Source: Podarcis erhardii (lineage: Eukaryota). From it: DNA of 64,000 bases. How positions within the stretch are numbered: the first letter of the stretch is position 1; the number at the start of each line of letters is the position of its first letter. The notes below the pieces were generated by a model that did no database searches, was not told the origin of the DNA, and saw nothing but the letters and a program-made list of their open reading frames with translations. Shown piece after piece: positions 5,443 to 61,400 of the stretch. The stretch lies in the NCBI GenBank assembly GCA_964252035.1, contig OZ176201.1. One strand, 5' to 3'. A program made the position numbers and the translations under genes.

Positions 5443-8020
5443 GTGTATGTGGAAGCAGAGAGGGACAAATGTTGTTCTTTAACCACAGGCAGCAGTCCTG
5501 ATTTAAAGATTCAAAGGCTATGATACTGAGTCATTTGGCACTTTTTTTTACTCCTCATCCTCTCCGCATTGCAGGGCAACTTTTTTCCCCTGGTAAAATA
5601 ATGGTTGGACACAATATGCCACTGGAAACCACAAGAGGGAATAGTGCTCTTGTGCTTGAGGGTTTCCCACAGAAATCTGGTTGGCCACTATGAAAACAGA
5701 AACCTGGATTAGATGGCTTACTGTCTGGTGTTTTTATGTGGCTTAGAGTCCAAAAGAGAAATGCAAGTAAACTCAGCATGTGCTCATTTGAAATAGGCGC
5801 GTATATTCTGGAAGAAGCTTCTGGAACGAGAAGTTGTGCAGTTGCCAGCTTCAGGAACCAGGGTTGTCATTTTTTCAACTGTCCACTGTCAGCAAGCCAG
5901 GCCATGCTCCCTCCTGGTCAACCAGCAATCCCATGTAACAACAGAGAATGCAGCCCTCTATTGAAAACACAAAGTATGGTACTGTTTTGCTGAGCTATCC
6001 CCGGGAGGAAGCAGGGAGGCTCGTCTCTTCCAACTGTGCAAGATATTTGGCCACTCAGAATGCCTATGGATGATCTAGAGCTGGCCCCTTCCAGGCCATA
6101 GGAGCAGAATGGGGAGTGGGCAGCCCTTCCCATAAGCTAAATAAACATATATTTAATTATGGTGACAGCTCCTGTCCTAATCTGCCCCCTTCAGTTGCTC
6201 AACTAAGATTTGAATTGGACAGCAATTGCAGCAATGTGGAGAGAGGAGTGAAGTTCCTGCAGTGCAGAAAATAATTGTTCAAAGGATTTTCAGCATGACA
6301 CTCTGGGTTGATCTAATGGTCCACCTAGTGGTCTGCTCTGGTTGCAGCAGAGAATGTAATTCTCAAAGGAAATGAAAGACTGGTATCTTTGACTGATCAG
6401 CCTTTGCCCTCTTTCCTCAAGCTCAAATTCAGGAGTCAGTGGAAGGGATGGTCCTTAGCCAAGACAGCGTGAGGCACTATCTCGCACCTCTGCATTAAGG
6501 AGGAGTTTCTTGGCTTGTTTCCCTGTGAGATGGAGGAATTTATGTAACCTCTTCCAGGTGGATCCTCAGTACATGTAGAACTATATAAAACTGTAGGTAT
6601 TCATTAAGTCCAGTATACTGTCTTGGAAAGCATAAGCTGAAATGTGCAAAACAAAATAGTAGAGAATGCCTCCATTCTATGCAGATCTTGACACGCTCCA
6701 TTTTGGGACACTGATACATTCTCAAGATGCGTATACCCTGAAAACATCTGGTGCATAAGATCATTTTCTTTAATTTCTTTAAATATTTTTTATTTGTTTT
6801 CAATTACAGTCCAATCATAGCCTCATTATTAACAATACCAATTTATAATACAATACTGATCGTTCAAATACTGAATTATATAATTTAGATAAAGTGGCCC
6901 CCCGCATACCAGATTTGACGATTTTCTTTATTTCTGCGTTCCAAAATCTTATTAATTTCAATTACCTTCTGGTCATAGCAATAATCCCTCATACAACAAC
7001 TGCAATATTAATAACTTCTATTCATGTTGGCACATTAAATGATTTATAAAACTACAAGTGAGGAACTCAGATTATATCCTTGTTCTTCCTGTGTGTGTGG
7101 CAATTATTCTGTCCGTTGTGTTTCTTCCTGTCCTTGTAAGATGTTATGTCTTTCTTTCCCCCGGTTGTTGCTGTTATCCATCATGCCTTGGGCGGAGGTG
7201 ATATCCCATTGTTGTTCCAGGAATTTCTCCGTCGCTCCGTCCCATGCTTTGTTGTTTTGCAACTTTAACAACAGCTGCAAAAGTCACTGTCTCAGTAAAT
7301 ACTACCTGTTGTCACAATTTTTCCTCTCAGCCTGGGAAGAAGAGCTGTCTGTGGAACTACAGATGACTCAACAAAGAACCCTATGAGTTCCTTGGCAGTT
7401 CACGGACTCCTTTCGTCCTTCCTTCCACTGCAGATATATAAGCAATTACACTTCCAATTAAATTAAATCCCAAGTCCTCTTAGTGTAATTCAGTTCACTT
7501 TGTAAATAATAAAGGATGGGAAAGGGTCAGCTCCAAGTTTCCATCATAAACCTTTTGCAAAATAGAGCTTCCCTCCCTTTTTCCTCTTTACACACACAGT
7601 TCTGTTTGATGTTATATTCCATATTTATAATCCAGTTTCTTCCATCCTCGCTTGTACAAATGTATTTTGAACTAACATTCAGAATGGGATGTCCCTATTT
7701 TCATTGGAGAAATCTTGGAGGGTATGAGATAGAAGTAGAATGATGGCATGAGAAGATGGTGTGCTACTCGGGGGAGAAAATGGAAGGAGAAAGACATCTA
7801 GTGAGGAAATAACTGAAAGTCTGCCTCTTTCTCTACAGACCTCCTTCAGTGTTAAGATCGGCAGAGGAAGCCCTCTTTGGTTCTTTCACTGCCTTCAGAA
7901 GCTTGGGGGTAATGGTGGATAAGAAGAGGGCATTCTCTGTGGCAACCCATAAGTTGCGGCACTGCCTCCTCACAGAGATGCATCCGGCATCTTCATTATA
8001 TACTGTGGCTTCAGTATACA

Positions 8021-8786: not shown

Positions 8787-11700
8787 TTATGGCTTTTCAG
8801 GCAACCCAAATAACTCCTCTGGGATTTTCTTAAGCAGCTGCATCTTTGAGAAGACTTGGTTCAGCACGGCCCTGGCAGCTGTTAGCTCCAATGGGGATTC
8901 TGCTTGCTTGGCAAGAGAGACCCCTCACGTTGCCAGTGCCAAGACGTGATGATTAAGGCTGCGTTTTCTCCCCGTCTCATGCTATGCAACTGCTGATTTA
9001 TTTCACAATGCTGTGTGTGTAATTCCTAGCACGCCGTCCAAATCGTTGCGCAAATAATATTTACTTGTGTGGGAACATGCGCTTGTGGCATCAGGAAGTT
9101 TTCACAGAAATCTGCAATGAATATCGGGGGTGGGGAGTAGAAAGACAATTGTGATGTAACTGCAATCACAGTCTGCTGTCAAGACTCGATGACTCAATAG
9201 CAGATACAAGGCACCCTTAATATAGATGGATTGTCTGTGCTTAATGGTTACCAAATGTTCCTCGCTTAAATTTATTTATTGTTTATTTTGTTTAAAGGGA
9301 TACTTTTATTTGGAGATGCAGTCCTTTATTTGAGATCAGAGATGTTGCTTCATGCGCAGTAACTATGTCATGGCAATTTATTTGCTATGCAGACTTCCCT
9401 GAGTTTACAAAGCTGGATGGATAACAATATGGAAGCGCAGGATTGTACCTTATGCTGATCCTACTTAATTTGATGCAACCCATAGGCTCCTGTCTGCCAT
9501 AACTAACACTTCTCTCATCTCTGTTGAGTCCTGGTAAGATCCAGCATAGCCTAGTGGCTAGAGCACTAGACTATGACCTGGGGAATCCCAGGTTCAAAAC
9601 CCTTCTCAGCCATGAAACTCACTGGATGCTTGTGGGGCAGTCACCATCCCTCAGCCTAAGTTGCATCAAAGGATTGGGGGGGGAGTGTTCCATGTATGGT
9701 ACCCTGTTGGTGGTGGACTTGGGCTTGACTTGCATATGTTGTGGAGAAGAAACCATTTGTCAGGTGCAGCTGCCATGGCACAAAAGTAACCACTATATGT
9801 AAGATAGTTGATTATGTGGTTATAAGAATATGGGAGGACCAGCATAAAGTATGTAGGTGCCCTTTTCACCAGCCTATGCTCCCTGCAAATTCTGTTTATG
9901 ATCCATCTCCTATGAAACTAATATATGTAGCTCAGGTCACTTGAAAGTCAACTGGAGCTATTTGCTCTTCTCTTAGGATTTGTGGGATTCTAAAAATGCA
10001 CAGATTTTCACATAAAGTGTGATAGATTGTTCCAGGCAGGTGGACTGGATTAGTCACTAAGGGTATATACACATTAGTGGCTTAAAACGCAGCGAGATCA
10101 TTTCCCCCCACTGCAGTTCAAGTCACATTTGCACGTGCAGTACGTGCCACGCAGGGGACAAAGGTGTCTTCACTTGATGCACATTACCTGCTTTATTTTC
10201 CTACACCTGCAACTCCCCCAAACTCCTATTCAAGGAAGCTGACATCTATGCACGTGCTGTCATCTGCCCATGAGCAACAGCTGTTTGACCTGCACAAACT
10301 TCAGATTAATCAGGGCTTGTTTTCAAATTGAATGGAAGTTGTCTTGAGGGGAAATGCATCAAACAGAAGTAAATCTGAAGAAACTATGGATTACATGTAG
10401 ATTGTAGCTAACTTCATGTGCACCTAGCTTTGAATACCAGTGGTGGGAGCACACTGAAGATAGAGTAAATGGTAATGTGTGGCTTTTGGCTTTCTGCTAT
10501 GATTTTATAACTCCCCCTTCCATTTTTTAACAAAGTAAATTCTTCCCTGGTATATGATTACAGTGGTACCTCGGGTTACATACGCTTCAGGTTACATACG
10601 CTTCAGGTTCAGACTCCGCTAACCCAGAAATAGTGCTTCAGGTTAAGAACTTTGCTTCAGGATGAGAACAGAAATTGTACAGCAGCAGGAGGCCCCATTA
10701 GCTAAACTGGTGCTTCAGGTTAAGAACAGTTTCAGGTTAAGAACGGACCTCCAGAACGAATTAAGTACTTAACCTGAGGTACCACTGTACAAAGGAACAG
10801 ACAGATGAACAGGTAACCACAAATACACACCAAAGTAAAACAAAATAAAAACAGTTTAAGGGCTGAAAAAAGGCCCTTGGTTATTTGACATAATATCTTT
10901 GGGGATACTGCCATCATGTGGCTTACTGATGCTCAGTTTCTTGCCATATTTTTTCATCATCTTGGTGCCCTCCAGTTCAAAAATCTTCTTGGTTATCTTC
11001 CTGGATAAACGGGACAGAGGGTGGGGAAGCAAATACAAATAAACTTGCACAATCTTTAGTACCACAGGGCCGACTAAATATTTTAAATGGTTACATGTGC
11101 AGCAGGCCCATGAGTTCTGCAGTCTGTGAGGGCCCTGATCCAGAGAAAGGGATAACCATAAGGGTGGAGGGGGCTTTGTAGACCATGCCCCTGCTTGATG
11201 CATGCAGGCAATCCTGCGCTAGAAATGGTCCCATCACTAGTTTTTATTTTTTAAAAAAAGTAGCCTTTTCAAAATCAAATTCTTTCCCATTGCCCAAGGA
11301 TAAGAAAAACAATATATTACTGTATTCACGGATTCTTGAAAATAAAATACTTTATTCTTGGGAAATCCCCCAGCCTCTTCTTGAAGCAAGAATCCACCAC
11401 TTCTCTAGGTAATTGGTTCAACTGTCAAACTGCTCTTTCCATCAAAAGTAATCTTGTGCCCCTTTAAGCTTAGTAGATCTGGCCTTTGAGGGCAGCAGAG
11501 AATAAGTCTTTTGCCCTCTAGTTCTATAACGACAGCCATTCAGGTAACGAGAAGAGTGCTATCATTATCATATACCCCACCTGTGCCTTCCCTTCTACAG
11601 GGTAAATATAATCAGTCAGTTCAACCTTTCCTCATAGGATTTGTGTTCTGTATTGGTGACTTCATTACCCTGCCCCCCCATGAACCTGTTCTTTATTGTC

Positions 11701-49400: not shown

Positions 49401-52400
49401 TTACTAGCCCTTGCTCCTGAGCTTTTAATAACAACTCCCTCTGTAGACTTTAGCAGACGAAAAGTTTATTCCCATGCCAGGAAGTGCTTCGCCTGCTGTT
49501 GCTTCCAGATCAAGCTGTTGCTAAAAGCACAGGAGAAGCCAAGGCCGTTTTATTCTGGTCAGTTGGATGGGAGGAGCATGGAAGAGAGAGAATGACTGAC
49601 TGACTGACTGACTACTATGGTACTTACCTTATCATATTTAAACAAGCTTTCAAGAAATTTCCCTGGGTCCTGAAGAAGGACTTTGCCAGGTTCCCAATAG
49701 TCATCTAACTTGGAACCTAGTTTCTCTCCTGCCACTTTCTTGGGCTTGATACCCTTCATAATGCAGACAGCTTCAATCACCATCTTCACTCCAAGTGGAG
49801 GACGCTGCATCGCTCGCACCTAGTTGAAAACATGGGGGAAAGAAGTGGATCAGTAATTCAGTATAATGTCACATCTGCTGGAGGGCATTCCTAACTATCC
49901 TGGACTTCAGTACTGAGGCATGGAATAAATCAAGATTACAAAATGGTCTTTAAAAGAGCACCAACAGTCATAAAGCTGAGTGCCCTTTCTCTGATCATTG
50001 CCATTGTTTATAACACGCTATCCATGTACACAACACTTTACAAACAAAGAAATGATAGGTCCCTGCCCCCAAGGGGCTTACTGTCTACAAACTGACACAA
50101 GGAAGACAACAAAGGAAGGGGTAAAAGGGGCAAGAATATGATATTACTTCAGTGACATGTATTTAAGCTTAGTTATAATGGGGGCATGAGGACTAGTGGG
50201 GTTCTGCTAAAGGCTACATGGAAAAGTAGGAGGGGTTTGAAGATAGGATGGCATCATGGGGACATTCTGGGAGGCTGCAAAGAGCAAAAGACCTTTGGGC
50301 AGCAGAGGGTGGCAGAGAGGGACAAGTGAAGATTACAGGCAGGAATGCATCAGGATATATGAATGAAGAGGGGTAAGGGACCATGCGGATAACTGAATAG
50401 GTAAGAAGTCTAGGAACTTAAGGAAGTGTATCATGTGGCCATCATTATAAGAGAGTTGAATGCTTTTTGACAACCAAGTGCTGGACTGAGGTGAGGGGAA
50501 CAAAAATGAGGCAAGATGCTGAGAAAAGTTTGCAGTGATTAAGATGCAAGATGACCAGGGCCTGAATCAGCTTTTGCCAAGATGTCAGAAAGAAAAGGAC
50601 CAAGGGAAAGAGTGAGAGTGTGTTGTACCTTTTCAACAGGGTAGGTGGTGGTGTTATCAACGAATACAGATAGTGTGAGGGGGCTGGGACAAATGATGAG
50701 AAGTTTGCTATTGGATGTAATGAATTTGAGACAACAATGGAACTACCAAAAAGAAATAACCAGTGAAGTACTTGTACATGTGACATCAGATGAAAGGGGG
50801 AAATTTTAGGATAGCGAGGGAGAACTGGGCATTAGCAGCACACAGGTGGTACTTAAAGCCACTCTACAATGTGTGTAGAGGAAGAACAGCAGAAAGGCAA
50901 GAATAGGAACCACAACACAGAAGGAAAGTAGGAGAAGAGCTTTCTTGTATGAAAATGCTAAAAGAGCAATTAGGCATGTAGGAAAAGAATTCATGGAGGG
51001 CAGAATCATGGAAACTTAGGGCAAAAGGGGAGCCAAGCAAGAGAGAGTGATTAATTTGAAAGGGAGAATAGAGGTCAAGGGGAGTGAGGACTAAATAGAG
51101 ACCTTTGAATTTGGTAGGGAGGAGGTGGTCAGTGATTTTGGTAGGTACAGTTGAAGAGGTGAAAAGATTTGCAGAAGAGAAAACTGAGATACCAGAAGTA
51201 CACAGCATACTCCAGTAGTCTGCAAATTGCAGCTAGATGCGAAATTGGACAAGAGATTTTTTTTTAGACTAGTGGAAAGGATAGAATCCAAAGTAACACT
51301 GAGTGAACATTCTGTCAGCTTAAGGAATTCTACTTGTGCAGTTGAATTTTTTCTCCTCCCTCCCACACACCCCTTAAATCTATTCTAGGGGTTTCCCAGC
51401 CCCATGAAGCAGAATTGGAAGGGGCATGGAGTGTGTGCGGGGGGGGGGGGGGAGAAGGGGACAAGTTCCACTGCACAAGCAGACAGGATGGGCTTGCTGA
51501 ATACTACCCAGTGGCATGTTTAAATGCAGTCATTTTGAAGGTGTGGTTCTTATTTATTGGGAGGAGATGATAGCTGCCCTGAATATGGCTGCTTCTTTAG
51601 GTTTGAAACACCACCTACTTAGGTTTGATTTACACATGCCTAGTGGCATGAGGAAAAAGGAAGACTGGGTTCATAAACCTTTCATAGTGTAGAAAAGAGA
51701 ATTTCAGGACATGAAGTGCAGTAAGTGTCCAAATCCTAGGGTGGCCAGTTGAAAAAGACAAAGCTCCCAAACCTTTAACAGCTATGTAGAAGAGGGATGT
51801 TAGCAACTGCAGCACATAATATAAGCAACACCAGCTGAAAGTCCTCCTTCTACATAACTATTAACGGGGCCCAGTCTTCTTTTTCAGCAGGTAACCCTTT
51901 CAAATGCTGTCTTCTGCATATCCATTAAGGATGCAGGGCCCTGACCTTTTTTGTTGTGCTCAAGTATGAGGAACCTTTGGCTGTTCAGATGATGCAGCTC
52001 CCATCAGCCCCAGCAAGCATGGCCAATGGTTTCTCACATCTGGTCTAGATCACTTAGAGTTGCCTAATTTATGGCACAATCTTAACCATGTCTACTCAGA
52101 AGTAAGCCCTGTTGAATTCTATGGGGCTTACTCCCAGGTAATTGAGGTCAGGACAGTGAGCCTTAGTCTCTCAAAGCTTTATGAGTGAACAATATTGTGC
52201 TTGGCATTATATGAAAACTGTCCCTGTTGTCAGATCTTTGAAGATGGTTTCATGTTTGCAAGTTGTCACTCAATGTCAGAACCACACTGAATGAGAAAAG
52301 AACATTTGTGCTTGAACTTTCCCCGGTTTAGATTATTGTCATACTACCTCTGTGTCGATAAATTGACTAAAGGGTTGCTAAAGAATCGTAAAACAAGGAT

Positions 52401-55400
52401 GCAGTGATGGGGAGGTATGGGGAAGTCGAAGGAAAGAAGGTGCATGAAAATAAGAATATGAAGTTATACATGTTTAAATGTTTTGTATGTTTTTGTTTTG
52501 TGTTTCGCTTGTCTTTATTATGTGTTTGGAAAATGAATAAAAATTATTATAAAAAAAAAAAATACTACCTCTGTGTCAATGTATGTATGTATGTATGTAT
52601 GTATGTATGTGTACTTGGAAGCTCCACTAAATTTACTTTCGGGTAAGTGTGCATTCAGTTATGGATAAAACCACCTGATGCAAATAATGGCTGAAGTGTC
52701 CCAGTGTTTGCCATCAGATGGCTAGGTAGGTATGCATGCAAGAGAAGAATCTCAAGAATGTCTTTTTGGAATGCAATGGGATGAGCTCCCCTATTATGTA
52801 TCAGTAGGGCTACAGGCTGGGAAAGTACTGAGCATACTAGAGCTGATGGGCTTTCATTGCATTGCCACCCGTGAGCAGAAATTGTACAGACAGGATGGCA
52901 GTGATGATCAATACAAAAGGCAGCTGCCGGATATAGGAGTACAATACTAGATAGAAACTAATCGTACCAATTTGCCAATTGGCTTCCAATATAGCTTTAA
53001 CACAGCAGTTTGCAATCAGGACAATTAGCAGCCGCTAATACTTGATCTTTGTGTTGTGAAAAGTTCCCCCTGCTGGTTTCTGCAGAAATAGGTATAAGAG
53101 AACTCCAGGCTACAGTTTGCTTCCAGGGTTACAGGGGTAAGTTACAAAGAGTGGCTAAAAAAAGACTACATGCATTGTTGTTTTGCTACTGCACCAGTGG
53201 AGTTTTGATCACAGAATTGCTGAGTTGGAAAGGACCCCGAGGGTCATTTAGTCCAACATCCTGCAATGATGTTGATGCAAATAAAAATGCAAAGTAAATC
53301 ACTTGGCTCACAGGATTGCTCCAGGGTGGTTGTGGTCTGTGTGTGAAGAAGCTGGGGGATAGTATCCAAAGGGCAGAATAAGTATTTATGCAGGGCCCTG
53401 AAACTTTTCCCTGACCATGAGCAATCCTGCTTGATCCTCCTTTATATTATAAAATTTAACCTATTATTATCATCTGCATGCTTTCAAGATAAAAGCTATT
53501 TTAACACCCAAATGCATGGAGAAAGTTAACACTAAAATTCTCAAGGTGTGGAATTCAGATAACCAATACTAGGGGTGTGCATCAGCTCTGTGTACTTCCC
53601 AAATTAATGAGGCAAATAGGGGTGATTTGGGTAAGGTTTTCACATGCTTGAATCAGACTGACTGGAGACTCCTTAAAGTCCCAAGTTCCTCTGTAGAATT
53701 GAGTGTCCCCCATGCTACTTTTCGAAATGAGTGCTGCATTCTTTCCCAGGGGAAAGATTCTGTATCCCCCAACGATCTCTGTGAGTTGGGAGGAGAAGAC
53801 TGTCTACTTACTTGCATGGGTTCTTTGCTGGGTAACAGGCTCTTTGTACAACCTCCCACCCCACCCCCGGAATGTATCTGCATACAATTTGGCAGACTTA
53901 ATCAACCCTTATAGGGCTCCTATATCTGCAAATTTCATCAAATTCTGTGAAATGAGAAAAAATTATAGCCACGTTTAGATTTTCCATTACTGAATGTAGG
54001 AAAAGCAGAGCTTTGTTTTTAGTAGAATGAATTTGATCCCCCCCCAAAATGAGTCAAGCTGGAAAGATGGAGTGACTCCAAAAAAGACTGGGCTGCTTCT
54101 CAAAGCGGAAGATACAAGTCAAAATCTTATGGTTGGTGCACACCTCTATTAAACGTCTTACTTGTGCAATGATAGAATAGGTAGGCACAAGGGAGACCTC
54201 CCTGCATTTTAATAAGCAAACTGCATCTGCTCCCCCCAGGGTTCGAAGAACCAGAACATGCTCTCACGGAGACGCTCCAGAGTTTTCCTCCTGGATACAG
54301 TTGACAGAGGAAGTGAGTTTGTGGAGACCCTGAAATTTGTTTATCCCAAGGCAGATGATCTTCAGGAGAAAGACTTTGACTGGCTCTTTGATTGTCCTGA
54401 GACAGAACAGTTTCTTGAGTCTTTCTGCAACATAGTGGGGGAGGAGAATGTATCCAGTTCTACAGAACTGGAGGCCTATGAGAAACTGGTCATTTCCGGG
54501 AAGCCTGTTCTGGAAGGTGAAGCACTGGAACAGGTGTTGAAGACCTGCCGCCAAGCCTCTCAGCTCAGGTGTGCTATGCAGGAGAATGACACCTTGCCTC
54601 TTGAGACACTTGAACAAGAGGTGCAGATGCTGAAGAGCCAATGCGCCTGTCGGGTAATGCGGCGCACCAAGCTCCAAATTCGTCTAGCCAGCTTGAAGCG
54701 GGAGCTCTGTCATTCAGCTGAGAAGAAAGAGAAAGCAAGCCGGGAGCTGAAGAAGGCACACCTGCGGCTAGAGCCAGAGAACTTTCAGAGCAATGATGCT
54801 CTCAGCCAAGCCTGTAAGAAAGTAAAGGAGCTGATGCAATGGCACAGGAAGCCTGCAAGCAAGCGGCAGGAAGCCTCAATGGCAGCAGCGGACCTGGAAC
54901 GTTGCCTTGAATTGGAAGAAAAAGTCACAAAGGCTTTATTGGGATTCTCACCAAAGGTCTTGCCAGATGTTGTCAGCGATGTGGAAGCTGATCAAACAGT
55001 TCTGGTGAAAAGGGGGCAGGGAGACTCTTGGGAAAAACTGGATACAGGGTCTATGGAAAGACGAGCTCAGAAAGTGCTGCTAGATAGTAAGAGTACATTC
55101 TGCAGTGATGATTCTGAGGGTCACAAAACGACACATGGCACGCTGAAAAGCCAAGTTCTCCCCAAGGGGCAGCTGGCCAATAAGAACGAGCCAGAGATTA
55201 CTTGTAAAGCTCTGCCGCAAGATACGGACCGAATGGAAAGTGAGAACTTCAGAACCGTTCAGGATGGTCGTCAAGGAGGGTTGAAGATGCGGGGAGAAGC
55301 TGCTGAAATGGAGCATACCAAAGATGACAAGCTGAGCAGCTATCAGGAAGAACTGGAGCGCATGGCATTGGCTTACATGTGCAGTCAGGAAAAGGCACTT

Positions 55401-58400
55401 GTGACCTCTGCAAACATTAAAGGAATTTCATATACCTTGAAATGGGCAGGGAAGGCCCTCAAGGCTGCTAAGGAGAACAAGGTAGGTCACTAGCTTCCTG
55501 GCTTAAACAAACAGGGTTTAGTAAATGACAGTAAGCACCTGTAATACAATAGGCTCTGCAACACAGAAATGCATTGAGAGAGAGAGAGATACGAATAATA
55601 AAAGAGTGAGACTCTAATTCACCTGTTGCACTTGGTGAATGGGTTTGAACCACTAGACTTTTTACATTTGTAGTGATGCTATAAAGTTCAGCAACAAGTA
55701 CTCTTTTTGTCACACAAGCCCCTGATTGGCTCTGCATTCATCAGAGCTGATGTTTGATTCTGTCCACCTCTGACTGTATCCATCCACCAAGAGCCAACCC
55801 CTGGACATTAAATTTTGTGGAAGTAGAGGGCTGAAACTGGCAGGTTTGGGATAAGGGACATGCTTCTGGAGAAGAGGAAATAAATGAGTGGTGGTGGTGA
55901 AAGCAGTTTCTCTAGGGAAACAAAGAAATCCCTTGCTGGGGATGAATGAAAATAAAAGAAACATTAGGAAGTGGGGCAGGGCAGGAGAGAAAAGTAAAAG
56001 CAACATGCAGTTTTCCACTTAAAGTCTGTACTGTATATCCAACATGTTCTCAACCATGAAGTCAAAAACTAATAGATTGGGGTGACAGCAAAAATCCCCT
56101 TGAAATGTTCCTATTTAAGTGACATCTTATTTATACGTAAACTAAATAATAAGAATAAGAATAAGAATAAGAATAATTTTTATTTATACCCTGCCCTCCC
56201 CAGCCAAGGCCGGGTTCAGGGCGGCTAACAAGCAATAAAAAAAACAAGTTGAATGAATGCAACTTAAAAACAAGATTAAAATATTATGTATTAACTATGC
56301 TGCAAACACAGACAAAAAGAATACTTCTGCCCCATGTTTTGAGTAAATTTTTACCTCCCACTTTATGGACTCTTGGCTGCTAAGCTTTATAAAGAAAGCT
56401 GATATAATCACTAGGCTTAGAAAATCAGAACTTAACAGGTCCTCTGGACCAATCTAGTCCTAAGCTATTTGTATTGTGTTCTGCATTATTCTCAGTTTTT
56501 TGAGTTACTTTTAACAAGATATATGGGTTTAGATATAGGGAGAGTACCATGATGTCATTCCCAATAGTATTTTAGTTAGAGTCCCATGGGTTAGGAGAAT
56601 ACTTGCCAACAAAACTGGTGGTTTTTCTTGCAAAGTTCGTAGAGGCCTTCAAGAACTGCAGGGGAATGTGAAATTTAATGTCCTTCTCTTCTGCAGGTGG
56701 AGGAAGAGAAAGGAGAACTGTATCTTCGTAGAGCCACTTTCCAGGAGCAGTTGTGTATCCTCCAAAGGGAGGTTAGACAGGCAAAAACCAAAAAACTTGT
56801 CCCTTTGCTCCAGACCAGTGCCAGCCTCCTTCGCTTGCCTGTAGTATGTGGAGAACTCACTTTGGAAACCAGGAGACTTGGTCATCTTGTATCGATGCAA
56901 GAACAAGCTGCTGGCCAAATGATGGTCCAGTGGAGCCATTTGGAGCTGCTGTGGCTCTTGCTGATGCATGAGCAGAAGAATCTGCAACAGATGAAGACCC
57001 AACTGGAGGGGATGGTGGCTACCTCGAATGAATCACATGCTAAATTGCAGGAATGGCAAGCCTGCTTTGAGGATTCAAGATTCTCCATTAAGCAATGCCC
57101 GCGGACTCTGATAGACCCCAGTGATCTCACCATGTTAAGGTAAAGATCCGAAGAGCTATGGCAGGGGAAAGGTATCAAATGGCTGCAAGTGTTAGAAACA
57201 AGGAAATACTTCCTTAGGGTAGAAATGGGGCTCGTTAGAAAACAAAAATAAGCTGGTATGTGACTAAAATGAAGCATAACCTATTGAAGATAAAACAAAA
57301 CAAATTCCTTCCAGTAGCACCTTAAAGACCAACTAAGTCAGTTCTTGGTATGAGCTTTCGTGTGCATGCACACTTCTTCAGATACACTGAAACAGAAGTT
57401 TCCAGACCCTTCTATATAGTGAGAAGGTGGGGAGGGGTATTACTCAGAAGGGTGGTGGGAATGGGTGATTGGCAGATAGATTGGCAGATAGATTCACAGC
57501 GTCTTATGTATTCCTTTCCTCCTTAGGCTGTGGGAGATGCTAAACAGGCACAGTCAAGATAAACAACTCTTCCATGCCTATGGGGCCTTGGCAGGCTGGG
57601 GCTCCCGGTTATGCCAGGAGCTCAGGATGCTCAAAGTGCAGCTGGCCACACCACACTCTCAGCTTCCTAAACTGGAGTCTGACAATGAGGTACTTCACTG
57701 TTTGATGTATGGTGACTGCAACCAGCTAATGCTTCGTGCTCAGGTAAGCAAAAGCTGTAGCCCATCATGTGTGTGAATCTTCTTTTTCTTGCTATATTAT
57801 CTATTAATAATCACAAGAATAGACCAAATTAACGGCACACAATGATCTTTGCTTTTGCTACACCATTAAGTGTTGTACTCTTGGGACTCCTGGTCCTCCT
57901 TAAGTAGCAAACTTCCCTCCCTGTGAAACTTCTAAATGATGAAAAATTGGAGAAATATGTGCTGCTGCTTCTGAACCCCTATTTGTTTTGACACCTGTTT
58001 TCTACAGGGACTAGAAGAACCTCTGGAGCAGCTTTACACCACACAAGCCAAACTCTACCAAATGCTAATGGACACCTTGAGTGATGTGAAGGCCAAGCAA
58101 AAATCCCTGCGGAGTCACTTTCAGCAAACTGAGCGCAGCCTCTACATGCATTTCTTCACTAACCCAGAACAGCTGAAGGAGCTGGTGCAAGATGCTGAGA
58201 AAGAGACCCTGGCATTTTCTTAGGTGTCGGTATAGTCACATGAGAGTAGTTCAGTAGAAAATAGTCCTCCACCTTGCTTGAAGGTACTCACATCTTATCA
58301 TCATCTAGACTGAGTGGAAAGTCTCCTTAGGGAGAATCCTGTTCATGAAAGCTTACATTGCTATGTTCTCTTTGTAAAATAGACAGATTTGGACCTACCG

Positions 58401-61400
58401 GTAATTCCATATACAGTGTTTCTTCCCTACAATGACTTGGTAAAAAAGGCTCTTAAACTACAGTCTGTTTTTTCTCTTCAGAGTCTGAGTAAAGTGATGG
58501 AAGTAGTGATGGATGGGTGGGCTGAGATGTTGGTTAAAACTAAAAGCTACAGTGCATACTTCTAAGATGGGGCGCTGCCCTTTTCTGCTTGCCTGCATAT
58601 TTATTGTCTACCTATTTTTCTATCTCAATTACTGATGTTATTCAAAAAACTGTGATGAAAGAAGAACATGGCTGCACAATCAAGAATGTTTTGTTTAATG
58701 GCCAGGGTCCATTTTTTGCTTCCTTAAATTGTGGTAATACAAGAAGCTCCATGGTTGAAAATATAATGTGTACCAGTTTCAGGCATGTTGCTTGTTTTAT
58801 ATTGAAAACAACTCACTGAAATATGCTAATAAAAGTAATGTTCACTTTAATTTTAACTATTTGTTTAGGCAAAGGGCTATACCAACTAGCCTAGAAATAT
58901 GCTGATGTTGCAATATAATTATTGAAACACATTCTCCCTTTACCTTTCAAATAGGATATGGTGACAGGCATTGCAGAATCCTGGTGGAAACTGGTCATAA
59001 TCACTTATTATAGAAGCCTATTTTTAGATAATTTCACTGGCAACAGGATCCACACATTTTATCATAAGTTACAATTTAATTTTGTTTCCAGAATTCTGAA
59101 GTAAGGTTATGGAGGGGCTCTCTTTTCATACACCAGTAGCTCAATATAACTGCATTTTCCACTATGCATTTAAGACATACTAAAAGATATTGCACATATC
59201 TCAATACACCTATACATTGCTTTTGGTGACTTGCTGCTGCCACCTGACAATACAGATGAGCTACTTGCCGGGGTCGGCACCAACTAACAATAAGTCTTCA
59301 CATGCGTAGCAAAAATACACATCTAGAGCATTAAAAAAATCTCCATATGACTCTACTCTTAAGATCATCTCTAGGCACTGACTACAACATCAGTCAAATT
59401 GACAGCTGGCTAAATAAACCCAATTCTTGGAACAGTCCTTGAACAGGGGGAACATAATTGACAATAGGCCTTCTAAATTTTCTGGAAGTGCCAAATAATA
59501 GTAGGTAGTAACCCAGCATGTACCTTCAAATGTCAGTGAACAGAAAACGAGACAAGGATCTGTAGCACTAATTTTCTGCTTGTATTCAGCAGCTGTCAAT
59601 GTTCTTCCCAGCTAGGAAGCTTTGCAGTGGCTCAATAATCTAGTAAAAAGGGAGTTGGCCTTTGAATTCAATAGGACTAACTTCTGAAATGACACAAACA
59701 GGATTGTGCTGTGTGATGTGAACTATGCTTTTACTTCCCTTACTCTTCTCATCTAGTGAAATGAAGCCAGATGGTAACATTACTATAGAACCATTCGAGT
59801 CCAAAGAGTTAAGGTGGTAGAGGGATGCTGATACCCATCGTTTCAGCCTCTCCGGCAGGTGCAGACTGCTTTTCATCCCTCCTCATCAGATTTATCATTT
59901 GATGAGTGAGGAACAATGTTTGATCTGTGTATATGCATCTGCATATGTGATGGCTGGGATGTGGGTGAGAGAGTGTGCATGCTGGATATGACCCCTCTGC
60001 CAGTGTGCAGTACCCAAAGGCACTACATACCTTTGGCTGAAAAGGATTAGATTATTCCTCTTCAGGGACAGCCATCAAAAGAAATAAGCTGCTACAACTC
60101 ACTTACAAGGAAAAAAAGTTTGAAAATCAGAATGGGTGGGATGTTTAGGGGGTGTTACTATTGAACCTGTATCCATGGTAAAGCACAGACGGTATAACTA
60201 GTGTTCTTGTTGAAAGTATTGTTAAAAGCTATTCTTTCTCAACTCTGTTACCTCTGTAACATCATTTTTGTTGAGGTTCCTCAAGCTGGCAAGGGCAGCA
60301 TCCAGGGCAGGCAGGGCTTCTGCCAGGTCCTTCTGTGCGTCATCAGCAATAGCCTGAGCGGTCTGAGCTTTGACTTTGGCTTTCATTTCCTCTGCCTGCA
60401 CAGCATTCCGTGTTTCTTCTGCTACAGCTGTGTCTACCTGCAGCAGCACAAAGGTATTTGGAATCATGAATGCTTTCAGGACTGGCTAGATTAGAAGCAC
60501 CTTTTCTGCATCAGTCAGAGACCCAGTCTGCCTGCCATGGTAAACCATAGTTAACGGCTAGGCCTAAATACATGGCTCTCACTAGCACACGGGGTGGGGG
60601 GGCAAACCACAACAGTTGTTTTAGGATTACATCTGAATACAGGATTGTGGCTTGTTTCACTCCCTACCCCAGCCCTGAAAAAAAGCCCCAAGACCACATT
60701 AAGCCAAAGGAAAACTTTGACAACAGATTAATGTTTGTTTGGAGTGGAGCAAACCATGAGCACTTATTCAGATGAAACTTTAAGTTGGGGGTTTGTTTGT
60801 TTTCCTTCTGATCACTTGCAGGAAGGAAAAAAGCAAGCAGGATTAGTGTATTCACAGTAAACTATTAATTATGCTTTACCATGATGTGTTAATGAGGTCA
60901 TCGTTTGCCAAAGCATAAAAACATTCTAGCACAACAACAACAACAACCCAAGGGGCATGCTTTTCTCAAAAGGGCCAGGAGCAGATATGGCTGACCAGAA
61001 CTCTGAACAGGAACACTGCTGATACAGAATGATAGTATGCAATGTTTGGTTACCTGTCTCACTTGGGAAGTAGTATATGATAGCTTCAAGTTCTTTATTG
61101 TGCATGCATGGCTAAAGATAAAGAGACTGCTCTTCTTATGAACATGATTGTCTGAAATAAGCATCACACCTCACATAGCAAGGTTAAATATTTGTAGTGT
61201 AAAGGGCAGGTCATGTCATTCTGGAGCCAAAAGAACAAACCCAAATGGCACCCCCTTTTGCAGTAAAGAACAACAAAAGTTTTCCTTGTGGCAAATGTGT
61301 TGCCCCATTATTTTAATTGTAGGACTTGTATTGTGTGAAAACAAGGCAGAGATGCAACATGGGCCTCCCTTTCTCTAGCTTAAAGCTAACAAGGAAGAGT

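What the first reader, a model, noticed from the sequence alone, without database searches (positions are those of the whole stretch)
54240..58833. Intact, highly divergent HAUS3 (augmin) paralogue nested antisense inside the DNAH1 stalk-region intron
Seen: a 699-aa, 4-exon uninterrupted ORF on + with canonical splice sites and its own AATAAA. It lies entirely inside the 10.4-kb DNAH1 intron 49820-60251, the largest DNAH1 intron in the window, which splits LNKNDVTE|VRAMQRPP near the coiled-coil/microtubule-binding domain junction. Known: HAUS3 is a core subunit of the augmin TIII subcomplex that recruits gamma-TuRC for branching microtubule nucleation, and canonical HAUS3 sits at the POLN locus, not DNAH1. 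Inference: the many substitutions in otherwise conserved blocks and the unexpected location suggest a second copy. There is no CpG island upstream, which fits tissue-restricted expression. A microtubule-nucleation paralogue inside a sperm/cilia dynein gene suggests a germline- or cilia-specific augmin variant (meiotic spindle, manchette or axoneme).
Basis: partly seen in the sequence, partly recalled or inferred. Interest (0 to 1): 0.88.

Follow-up and report, generated by a model that had tools for sequence, protein, structure and literature searches.

The report
Ancient second HAUS3 gene inside DNAH1
This is a real, intact lizard gene for a very old and divergent second copy of the augmin subunit HAUS3 (called HAUS3L in chicken); it sits inside a DNAH1 intron in reptiles, birds and echidna, databases already annotate it, and I found no study of its function.

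Summary
A 4-exon, 699-aa open reading frame on the + strand (54258-58223) has AG/GT at every junction and an AATAAA at 58828. It lies antisense inside the DNAH1 intron 49820-60251.

It is a HAUS3-family protein, collinear with human HAUS3 end to end. It is 98% identical to the RefSeq "HAUS3" of Podarcis raffonei, so the gene is already annotated.

The key result is phylogenetic: vertebrates have two HAUS3 clades.
- **Clade A (canonical):** includes a rodent, a goat, birds, a viper, frog, caecilian, lungfish, ray-finned fishes and a chimaera. It lies next to POLN in kakapo.
- **Clade B:** includes this gene, all ~700-aa sauropsid proteins, echidna, salamanders, frogs, caecilian and lungfish.

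Birds, caecilian and lungfish carry both copies in one species. Snakes have both, in different viperid genera.

An AU test rejects orthology of this gene to amniote clade A (p = 5.5e-36). The nesting in DNAH1 is shared by lizard, alligator, grouse and echidna, but not by caecilian, axolotl or lungfish.

dN/dS is 0.2-0.3 and all five reading frames examined are intact. A ~125-residue stretch around an amniote-specific ~90-aa insert is predicted disordered and evolves almost neutrally.

Germline-specific function is untested; chicken HAUS3L follicle data give only a hint.

The parts
54258..55481 (+). Coding exon 1 (408 codons): sauropsid-specific N-terminal extension, HAUS3 N-terminal domain, variable disordered stretch around the insert, start of the coiled coil.
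   Evidence: ORF. Pfam PF14932 at E = 7e-34. Donor AAG|gtaggt. Aligns to human HAUS3 7sqk_C residues 4-221 and 256-299.
54963..55337 (+). Variable, disordered stretch within exon 1 (residues 236-360) that contains the amniote clade-B-specific ~90-aa insert.
   Evidence: The extra ~90 residues are absent from all clade A proteins and from amphibian and lungfish clade B. pLDDT is below 50 for residues 231-359. dN/dS is 0.99 against P. raffonei, versus 0.16-0.20 in the flanking parts.
56697..57139 (+). Coding exon 2 (443 nt), coiled-coil region.
   Evidence: ag|GTG...AAG|gtaaag. Same length class and phase as exon 2 of clade A in kakapo (437 nt) and of clade B in alligator (443 nt).
57527..57743 (+). 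Coding exon 3 (217 nt).
   Evidence: Canonical splice sites. Same phase as the 229-nt exon 3 of clade A.
58008..58223 (+). Coding exon 4 (71 codons) plus the TAG stop.
   Evidence: With exons 2-3 it aligns to human HAUS3 residues 312-594.
58828..58833 (+). AATAAA polyadenylation signal, 605 nt after the stop codon.
   Evidence: It is the only AATAAA/ATTAAA within 1 kb downstream of the stop. Its use is not shown.
49820..60251 (-). Host intron of DNAH1, in the stalk / microtubule-binding region.
   Evidence: GT...AG on the minus strand. The same antisense nesting is annotated in P. raffonei, alligator, grouse and echidna.
60252..60467 (-). DNAH1 exon upstream of the host intron. Only the 3' end is exact; the 5' end is the ORF bound.
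   Evidence: ORF ...[34 protein letters not shown]. Pfam PF12777 MT at 21.2 bits.
49628..49819 (-). DNAH1 exon downstream of the host intron. The 5' end is exact; the 3' end is approximate.
   Evidence: [31 protein letters not shown].... Acceptor shown.

Best explanation
This is the lizard orthologue of a conserved, protein-coding second HAUS3 gene, called clade B here; the chicken symbol HAUS3L probably denotes the same gene.

**History.** It arose by DNA-level duplication of HAUS3, keeping the same four coding exons and intron phases. The duplication happened before lungfish and tetrapods split, and probably before jawed vertebrates diverged. By the amniote ancestor the gene sat antisense inside a stalk-region intron of DNAH1. 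It has stayed there in sauropsids and monotremes. No therian copy appeared among the full-length hits.

**Sequence state.** It is under purifying selection. It keeps the HAUS3 N-terminal domain and the long coiled-coil and C-terminal regions, collinear with human HAUS3. Amniote copies carry an extra ~90 residues in a disordered, almost neutrally evolving stretch, and sauropsid copies add a 14-residue N-terminal extension.

**Inferred, not shown.** It replaces canonical HAUS3 as the coiled-coil partner of HAUS5 in the T-III half of augmin in certain cells. Given the CpG-poor upstream region and the chicken follicle data, those cells are most likely germline cells. The nesting in DNAH1 is most likely a frozen accident of location rather than a functional link.
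For: **Family.**
- Pfam PF14932 at E = 7e-34.
- The 98% identical P. raffonei protein matches human HAUS3 7sqk_C at E = 3e-64 and Xenopus 8at2_C at 1e-55. N-terminal residues 18-234 align to 4-221 and residues 361-695 align to 257-594.
- That protein also carries precomputed PF27044 and PF27045 hits.

**Two clades.**
- An exhaustive profile search was followed by IQ-TREE rooted on amphioxus and coral. Clade A has 97/86 support and clade B 100/98; each roughly follows the species tree.
- Both clades occur in Rhinatrema, Protopterus, Cariama, Spheniscus humboldti and Ardeotis.
- The AU test rejects sauropsid B plus amniote A as one clade (p = 5.5e-36). It also rejects a duplication on the sarcopterygian stem (p = 0.004).

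**Synteny.**
- Kakapo clade A lies directly upstream of POLN, matching the arrangement described in PMC4591814.
- Clade B is nested antisense in a ~4200-aa dynein heavy chain gene in Podarcis, alligator, Lagopus and echidna.
- It is not nested in caecilian, lungfish or axolotl.

**A squamate has clade A.** Canonical exons 1-2 lie on contigs from Macrovipera lebetinus reads.

**Gene structure.** Both clades share the same exons and phases.

**Constraint.** dN/dS is 0.33 against P. raffonei and 0.21-0.37 for deeper pairs. All five ORFs are intact.

**Expression hints.** There is no CpG island upstream. Chicken HAUS3L has log2FC -6.1 in F6 versus small yellow follicles, listed beside EIF4E1B and SPIRE1L.
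Against: - No expression data exist for this lizard, so the transcript ends and tissue pattern are unknown.
- I did not verify that chicken HAUS3L (GeneID 101751348) is the clade B gene.
- Assembly into augmin is untested. Clade B evolves about twice as fast as clade A and keeps only 91 of 145 positions that are highly conserved in clade A. It scores 116-118 bits on PF14932 against 269 for kakapo clade A.
- The monomer AlphaFold model is low confidence (pLDDT 57.7).
- The canonical copy was not shown in this lizard's own genome.
- The deep position of clade B could be partly long-branch attraction.
- Absence from therians, sharks and ray-finned fishes rests on the best 150 hits of a single search.
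Confidence: 0.8

Rival explanations
1. Clade B protein no longer joins augmin. It has taken on a new role as a coiled-coil scaffold, keeping only the ancestral fold.
For: - About 30% identity to canonical HAUS3 in the same species, no closer than vertebrate HAUS3 is to amphioxus HAUS3.
- Branches about twice as long as in clade A.
- About a third of the clade-A-conserved positions have changed, and amniote copies carry an extra ~90 residues in a disordered stretch.
Against: - The protein is collinear with HAUS3 over its whole length, including the C-terminal part that bundles with HAUS1/4/5 in the solved complexes (architecture as described in the text read).
- 63% of the clade-A-conserved positions are kept.
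- No new domain has been gained.
Confidence: 0.15
2. This gene is the only HAUS3 of lizards: the ordinary orthologue that simply moved from POLN to DNAH1.
For: - In the word-based searches every squamate hit belonged to this ~700-aa type.
- I could not search this lizard's genome for another copy.
Against: - The AU test rejects one amniote clade (p = 5.5e-36).
- Birds hold both copies, with clade A beside POLN.
- A viper has intact clade A exons 1 and 2, while other vipers have clade B.
- Even if lacertids had lost clade A, this gene would still be the clade B paralogue.
Confidence: 0.03
3. It is a decaying duplicate or an annotation artefact with no function.
For: The region evolves quickly, and the stretch around the insert evolves at dN/dS of about 1.
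Against: - The ORFs are intact in lizard, alligator, grouse and echidna, lineages separated since the amniote ancestor.
- dN/dS is 0.16-0.20 outside the variable stretch.
- Splice sites and intron phases are conserved.
Confidence: 0.02

Closest known systems
Canonical vertebrate HAUS3 (augmin subunit 3; human 7sqk chain C, Xenopus 8at2 chain C), the gene that shares its first exon with POLN
   Same: - Same Pfam family.
- Collinear from N-terminal domain to C-terminus.
- Same four coding exons and intron phases.
- Helical coiled-coil architecture.
   Different: - About 30% identity.
- Separate clade.
- Different locus: inside a DNAH1 intron, not beside POLN.
- No CpG island upstream here, whereas the human promoter has one per PMC4591814.
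- An extra ~90 residues in a disordered stretch, plus a 14-residue N-terminal extension.
- Faster evolution.
RefSeq 'HAUS augmin-like complex subunit 3' of Podarcis raffonei (P0001) and the ~700-aa proteins of other sauropsids; chicken gene symbol HAUS3L
   Same: - 96% identity over exon 1 and 98% over the aligned protein.
- Same exon lengths.
- Same antisense position inside the dynein gene.
   Different: Nothing of substance; this is the same gene in a closely related lacertid (dS 0.039). The link to the chicken symbol HAUS3L rests on the name only.
HAUS5, the structural paralogue and coiled-coil partner of HAUS3 within augmin T-III
   Same: Long helical coiled-coil subunit of the same complex. 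The language-model search lists HAUS5 clusters after the HAUS3 clusters.
   Different: No Pfam HAUS5 match here. The window protein is clearly of the HAUS3 type.

Membership tests
HAUS3 / augmin subunit 3 family | N-terminal HAUS-augmin3 domain (PF14932) above Pfam's gathering score. | tested here: met
   117.9 bits against a cut-off of 29.4, E = 7e-34. The P. raffonei protein scores 115.8 bits.
HAUS3 / augmin subunit 3 family | Coiled-coil and C-terminal regions (PF27044 HAUS3_CC, PF27045 HAUS3_C), collinear with solved HAUS3 chains. | tested here: met
   The 98% identical P0001 carries precomputed hits; the local Pfam copy lacks these two models. phmmer aligns residues 361-695 to human HAUS3 257-594 at E = 3e-64.
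HAUS3 / augmin subunit 3 family | Shared gene structure: four coding exons with the same intron phases. | tested here: met
   Window 1224|443|217|213 nt against kakapo clade A 912|437|229|264 nt.
HAUS3 / augmin subunit 3 family | Assembles with HAUS1, HAUS4 and HAUS5 into augmin T-III and supports branching microtubule nucleation. | not testable with these tools
   Only a low-confidence monomer model was made (pLDDT 57.7). No multimer prediction tool or experiment was available.
Canonical HAUS3 orthologue group (clade A, POLN-linked) | Groups with mammalian, avian and fish HAUS3 in a gene tree. | tested here: not met
   The gene falls in clade B (100/98). A constrained tree is rejected at p-AU 5.5e-36.
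Canonical HAUS3 orthologue group (clade A, POLN-linked) | Lies directly upstream of POLN and shares its first exon. | tested here: not met
   It lies inside the DNAH1 intron 49820-60251. Kakapo clade A lies beside POLN. The arrangement is described in PMC4591814.
Clade B HAUS3 paralogue (probably the gene named HAUS3L in chicken) | Groups with the second HAUS3 copy of birds, crocodilians, turtles, echidna, amphibians and lungfish. | tested here: met
   HMM score is 936 for clade B against 325 for clade A.
Clade B HAUS3 paralogue (probably the gene named HAUS3L in chicken) | In amniotes, nested antisense in the DNAH1 stalk-region intron. | tested here: met
   Seen in the window and in P. raffonei, alligator, Lagopus and echidna.

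The most novel reading that the evidence does not exclude
Clade B HAUS3 is an ohnologue from the early vertebrate genome duplications. It builds a germline-specific (oocyte or meiotic) version of augmin in most non-therian sarcopterygians and was lost in therian mammals. If so, mouse and human would be atypical models for how augmin works in vertebrate gametes.
Probability: 0.2. Interest if true: 0.7.

Novelty: already known. Interest (0 to 1): 0.42.

Why it matters
Augmin is studied almost entirely in human cells, Xenopus extract, flies and plants, and is treated as having one HAUS3. This work shows that most non-therian land vertebrates and lungfish keep a second, constrained HAUS3 gene. That gene has been distinct since at least the lungfish-tetrapod split and has been fixed inside a DNAH1 intron since the amniote ancestor.

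The gene is annotated, usually under the same name as the canonical one. My literature searches found no paper that describes it as a paralogue or tests its function. It is a clean candidate for a tissue-specific augmin variant and a clear case of long-term gene nesting.

For genome annotation there is a practical point. Two different genes carry the name "HAUS3" in sauropsids, and some models are wrong. The Rhineura protein is named as a BAP1 isoform, and the echidna model is truncated at the N-terminus.

Tried and rejected
- **Sole relocated orthologue.** This was my first reading (odds given). I dropped it after the exhaustive search, tree and names.
- **Alignment-based word search.** It was capped at 8000 candidates and reached only clade B.
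- **Last word search, with kakapo clade A.** It listed only the best 120 of 521 hits, all birds, so it could not show squamate clade A directly.
- **Indirect route to squamate clade A.** An unnamed 306-aa representative grouped with amniote clade A. Its Logan runs SRR32478113/4 were traced to Macrovipera lebetinus through PMC12377087.
- **Crotalus adamanteus.** The two HAUS3 entries on different contigs are both clade B fragments, not two paralogues.
- **Isoform X2 proteins.** They are not on record for contig look-up.
- **ESM Atlas search.** It gave only phylum-level taxa and did not help.
- **Literature search for HAUS3/POLN in squamates.** It returned nothing relevant.
- **blastn of the viper contig against the window.** It found no shared repeats.
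- **Monomer AlphaFold model.** It was too uncertain for a fold search, so I ran none.
- **Retrocopy origin.** Rejected because the introns are shared with clade A.
- **Earlier scan notes.** None mention HAUS3, augmin or POLN in this genome.
Full report
**What is in the sequence.**
The + strand between 54258 and 58223 carries four exons: 54258-55481, 56697-57139, 57527-57743 and 58008-58223. They join into a 2100-nt reading frame of 699 codons plus TAG. Every acceptor is AG and every donor is GT. The start codon has A at -3. The only AATAAA in the next kilobase is at 58828.

On the minus strand, two DNAH1 exons flank the gene. One ends ...LNKNDVTE|gt at 60252. The next begins ag|VRAMQRPP at 49819. 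The upstream exon matches the dynein stalk model PF12777.

CpG observed/expected is 0.05-0.26 upstream of the ATG. The only island-like stretch in the window is at 12.7-13.5 kb.

**What family it belongs to.**
Exon 1 matches Pfam HAUS-augmin3 at E = 7e-34. It also matches the HAUS3 chains of the solved human and Xenopus augmin complexes.

The best database hit is the RefSeq protein "HAUS augmin-like complex subunit 3" of Podarcis raffonei, also 699 aa. It is 96% identical over exon 1 and 98% over the aligned protein. That protein aligns with human HAUS3 from residue 18 to 695, apart from an inserted stretch, at E = 3e-64.

The window therefore comes from a lacertid close to P. raffonei (dS 0.039), and the gene is already annotated.

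**Orthologue or paralogue?**
My first reading was that this is simply the sauropsid HAUS3, because ~700-aa proteins of this type turned up in squamates, turtles, crocodilians and birds. That reading was wrong.

An exhaustive profile search of 1.84 billion representatives, a first tree and the source names showed two vertebrate clades. A careful IQ-TREE analysis rooted on amphioxus and coral gave the following.
- **Clade A (97/86 support):** Callorhinchus, sturgeon, teleosts, lungfish, frog, caecilian, mammals and birds.
- **Clade B (100/98 support):** lungfish, caecilian, frogs, salamanders, echidna and all the ~700-aa sauropsid proteins, including the window gene.

Each clade roughly repeats the species tree. 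Rhinatrema and Protopterus each hold one gene of each clade, on contigs of different length. Many birds hold both, for example Cariama, Spheniscus humboldti and Ardeotis.

An AU test rejects a tree in which sauropsid clade B and amniote clade A form one group (p = 5.5e-36). It also rejects, less strongly and with a long-branch caveat, a duplication on the sarcopterygian stem (p = 0.004). The duplication is therefore at least as old as the lungfish-tetrapod split and probably older than jawed vertebrates.

**Do squamates keep the canonical copy?**
The capped searches could not list squamate clade A proteins directly. An unnamed 306-aa representative grouped with amniote clade A but with neither birds nor mammals. 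Its contigs come from runs SRR32478113 and SRR32478114. A mitogenome paper assigns those runs to two specimens of the viper Macrovipera lebetinus (PMC12377087). The longer contig holds intact clade A exons 1 and 2.

Other vipers have clade B. So snakes have both copies, seen in different viperid genera rather than in one species. The same is likely, but not shown, for this lizard.

**Location through time.**
Kakapo clade A lies directly upstream of POLN on the same strand. That matches the shared-first-exon arrangement described for zebrafish, mouse and human (PMC4591814).

Clade B is nested antisense inside a ~4200-aa dynein heavy chain gene in four species:
- P. raffonei
- Alligator sinensis
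- Lagopus muta
- the echidna

It is not nested in three others:
- In the caecilian it lies next to a Notch-type gene.
- In lungfish no overlapping gene is called.
- In axolotl no overlapping gene is called.

The nesting therefore dates to the amniote stem and has been stable since. Every full-length clade B representative in the tree was either named as non-therian or fell among the bird sequences, and some short fragments stayed unnamed. Given how densely therians are sequenced, this suggests loss, but I did not test it directly.

**How it arose and whether it is functional.**
Coding exon lengths are as follows.

| Gene | Exon 1 | Exon 2 | Exon 3 | Exon 4 |
|---|---|---|---|---|
| Window and P. 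raffonei, clade B | 1224 | 443 | 217 | 213 |
| Alligator, clade B | 1251 | 443 | 217 | 213 |
| Lagopus, clade B | 1182 | 440 | 217 | 216 |
| Echidna, clade B | 1056 | 434 | 214 | 351 |
| Kakapo, clade A | 912 | 437 | 229 | 264 |

The echidna figure for exon 1 counts from an upstream ATG that the RefSeq model misses. Intron positions and phases are shared between the clades, so this is a DNA-level duplicate and not a retrocopy.

All five clade B reading frames are intact. Nei-Gojobori dN/dS is 0.33 against P. raffonei (17 synonymous and 21 non-synonymous differences) and 0.21-0.37 for the deeper pairs in which dS could be estimated. Within the Podarcis comparison it is 0.16 in the N-terminal domain, 0.20 in the coiled-coil and C-terminal part, and 0.99 in residues 236-360.

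That stretch contains about 90 residues that sauropsid clade B has and every other sequence in the alignment lacks. The longer echidna exon 1 suggests monotremes carry a shorter version. AlphaFold predicts residues 231-359 to be disordered, with pLDDT below 50. The monomer model as a whole is poor (pLDDT 57.7), as expected for an obligate coiled-coil subunit, so I ran no fold search.

Clade B evolves about twice as fast as clade A. It is about 30% identical to clade A in the same species and keeps 91 of the 145 positions that are highly conserved in clade A.

**What it most likely does.**
- **Shown:** it is a constrained HAUS3-family gene, distinct from the canonical one.
- **Inferred:** because it keeps the whole HAUS3 layout, including the C-terminal part that bundles with HAUS1/4/5 and the long stretch that pairs with HAUS5 (architecture as described in the text read), it most likely substitutes for HAUS3 in an alternative augmin T-III.
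- **Weak hints of where:** the upstream region is CpG-poor. Among the hits listed, some clade A proteins came from short Logan contigs, and one of them (L006) carries an intron-free full ORF, as a transcript would. No full-length clade B protein came from Logan. In chicken follicle RNA-seq, "HAUS3L" is about 70-fold lower in F6 than in small yellow follicles, listed beside EIF4E1B, SPIRE1L and SOX3 (PMC7367319). I did not verify that chicken HAUS3L is the clade B gene.
- **No evidence found:** nothing links the gene's function to DNAH1 or to cilia.

**Novelty and verdict.**
It is not new as a gene. It is annotated across sauropsid RefSeq genomes, and chicken has a gene symbol HAUS3L that probably refers to it.

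My searches found no paper that treats it as a paralogue, dates it, notes the nesting in DNAH1 or tests its function. I rate it as already known in kind, with moderate interest as an unstudied and probably tissue-specific augmin subunit that therian models lack.

Noticed in passing
P0002 (Rhineura floridana protein): A 705-aa clade B HAUS3 protein is named 'ubiquitin carboxyl-terminal hydrolase BAP1 isoform X3' in RefSeq. This is probably a naming or merging error caused by the neighbouring BAP1 gene.
   Followed up: no
L004:9437-10492 (echidna): The echidna RefSeq model (497 aa) starts at an internal Met. An uninterrupted ORF extends upstream to an ATG at 9437 and encodes the missing HAUS3 N-terminal domain, giving about 685 aa in all.
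   Followed up: yes
window 50000-51500: A stretch of about 1.5 kb inside the DNAH1 intron has strong strand asymmetry: GC skew +0.32 to +0.39 and AT skew +0.16 to +0.30, purine-rich on the + strand. Tandem Repeats Finder reports no tandem repeat there. It may be an old transposon fragment.
   Followed up: no
L003:11183-11329 (Lagopus muta): Intron 1 of the grouse clade B gene is only 147 nt, a multiple of three. This may explain some long single-ORF bird fragments in the protein database.
   Followed up: partly
Rhinatrema bivittatum clade B locus: In the caecilian the clade B gene lies about 1.5 kb upstream of a Notch-type receptor gene rather than in DNAH1. This could help identify the ancestral location and test an origin by whole-genome duplication.
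   Followed up: no
window 56148-56176 and 57467-57494: There are small microsatellites in the introns of the gene: (AATAAG)x4.8 in intron 1 and (GATTGGCAGATA)x2.3 in intron 2.
   Followed up: no
Clade A of birds: Canonical HAUS3 of birds sits on a long stem branch (0.28) and is only about 41-51% identical to a rodent's. It is less similar to mammalian HAUS3 than the caecilian protein is in several fragment comparisons.
   Followed up: no
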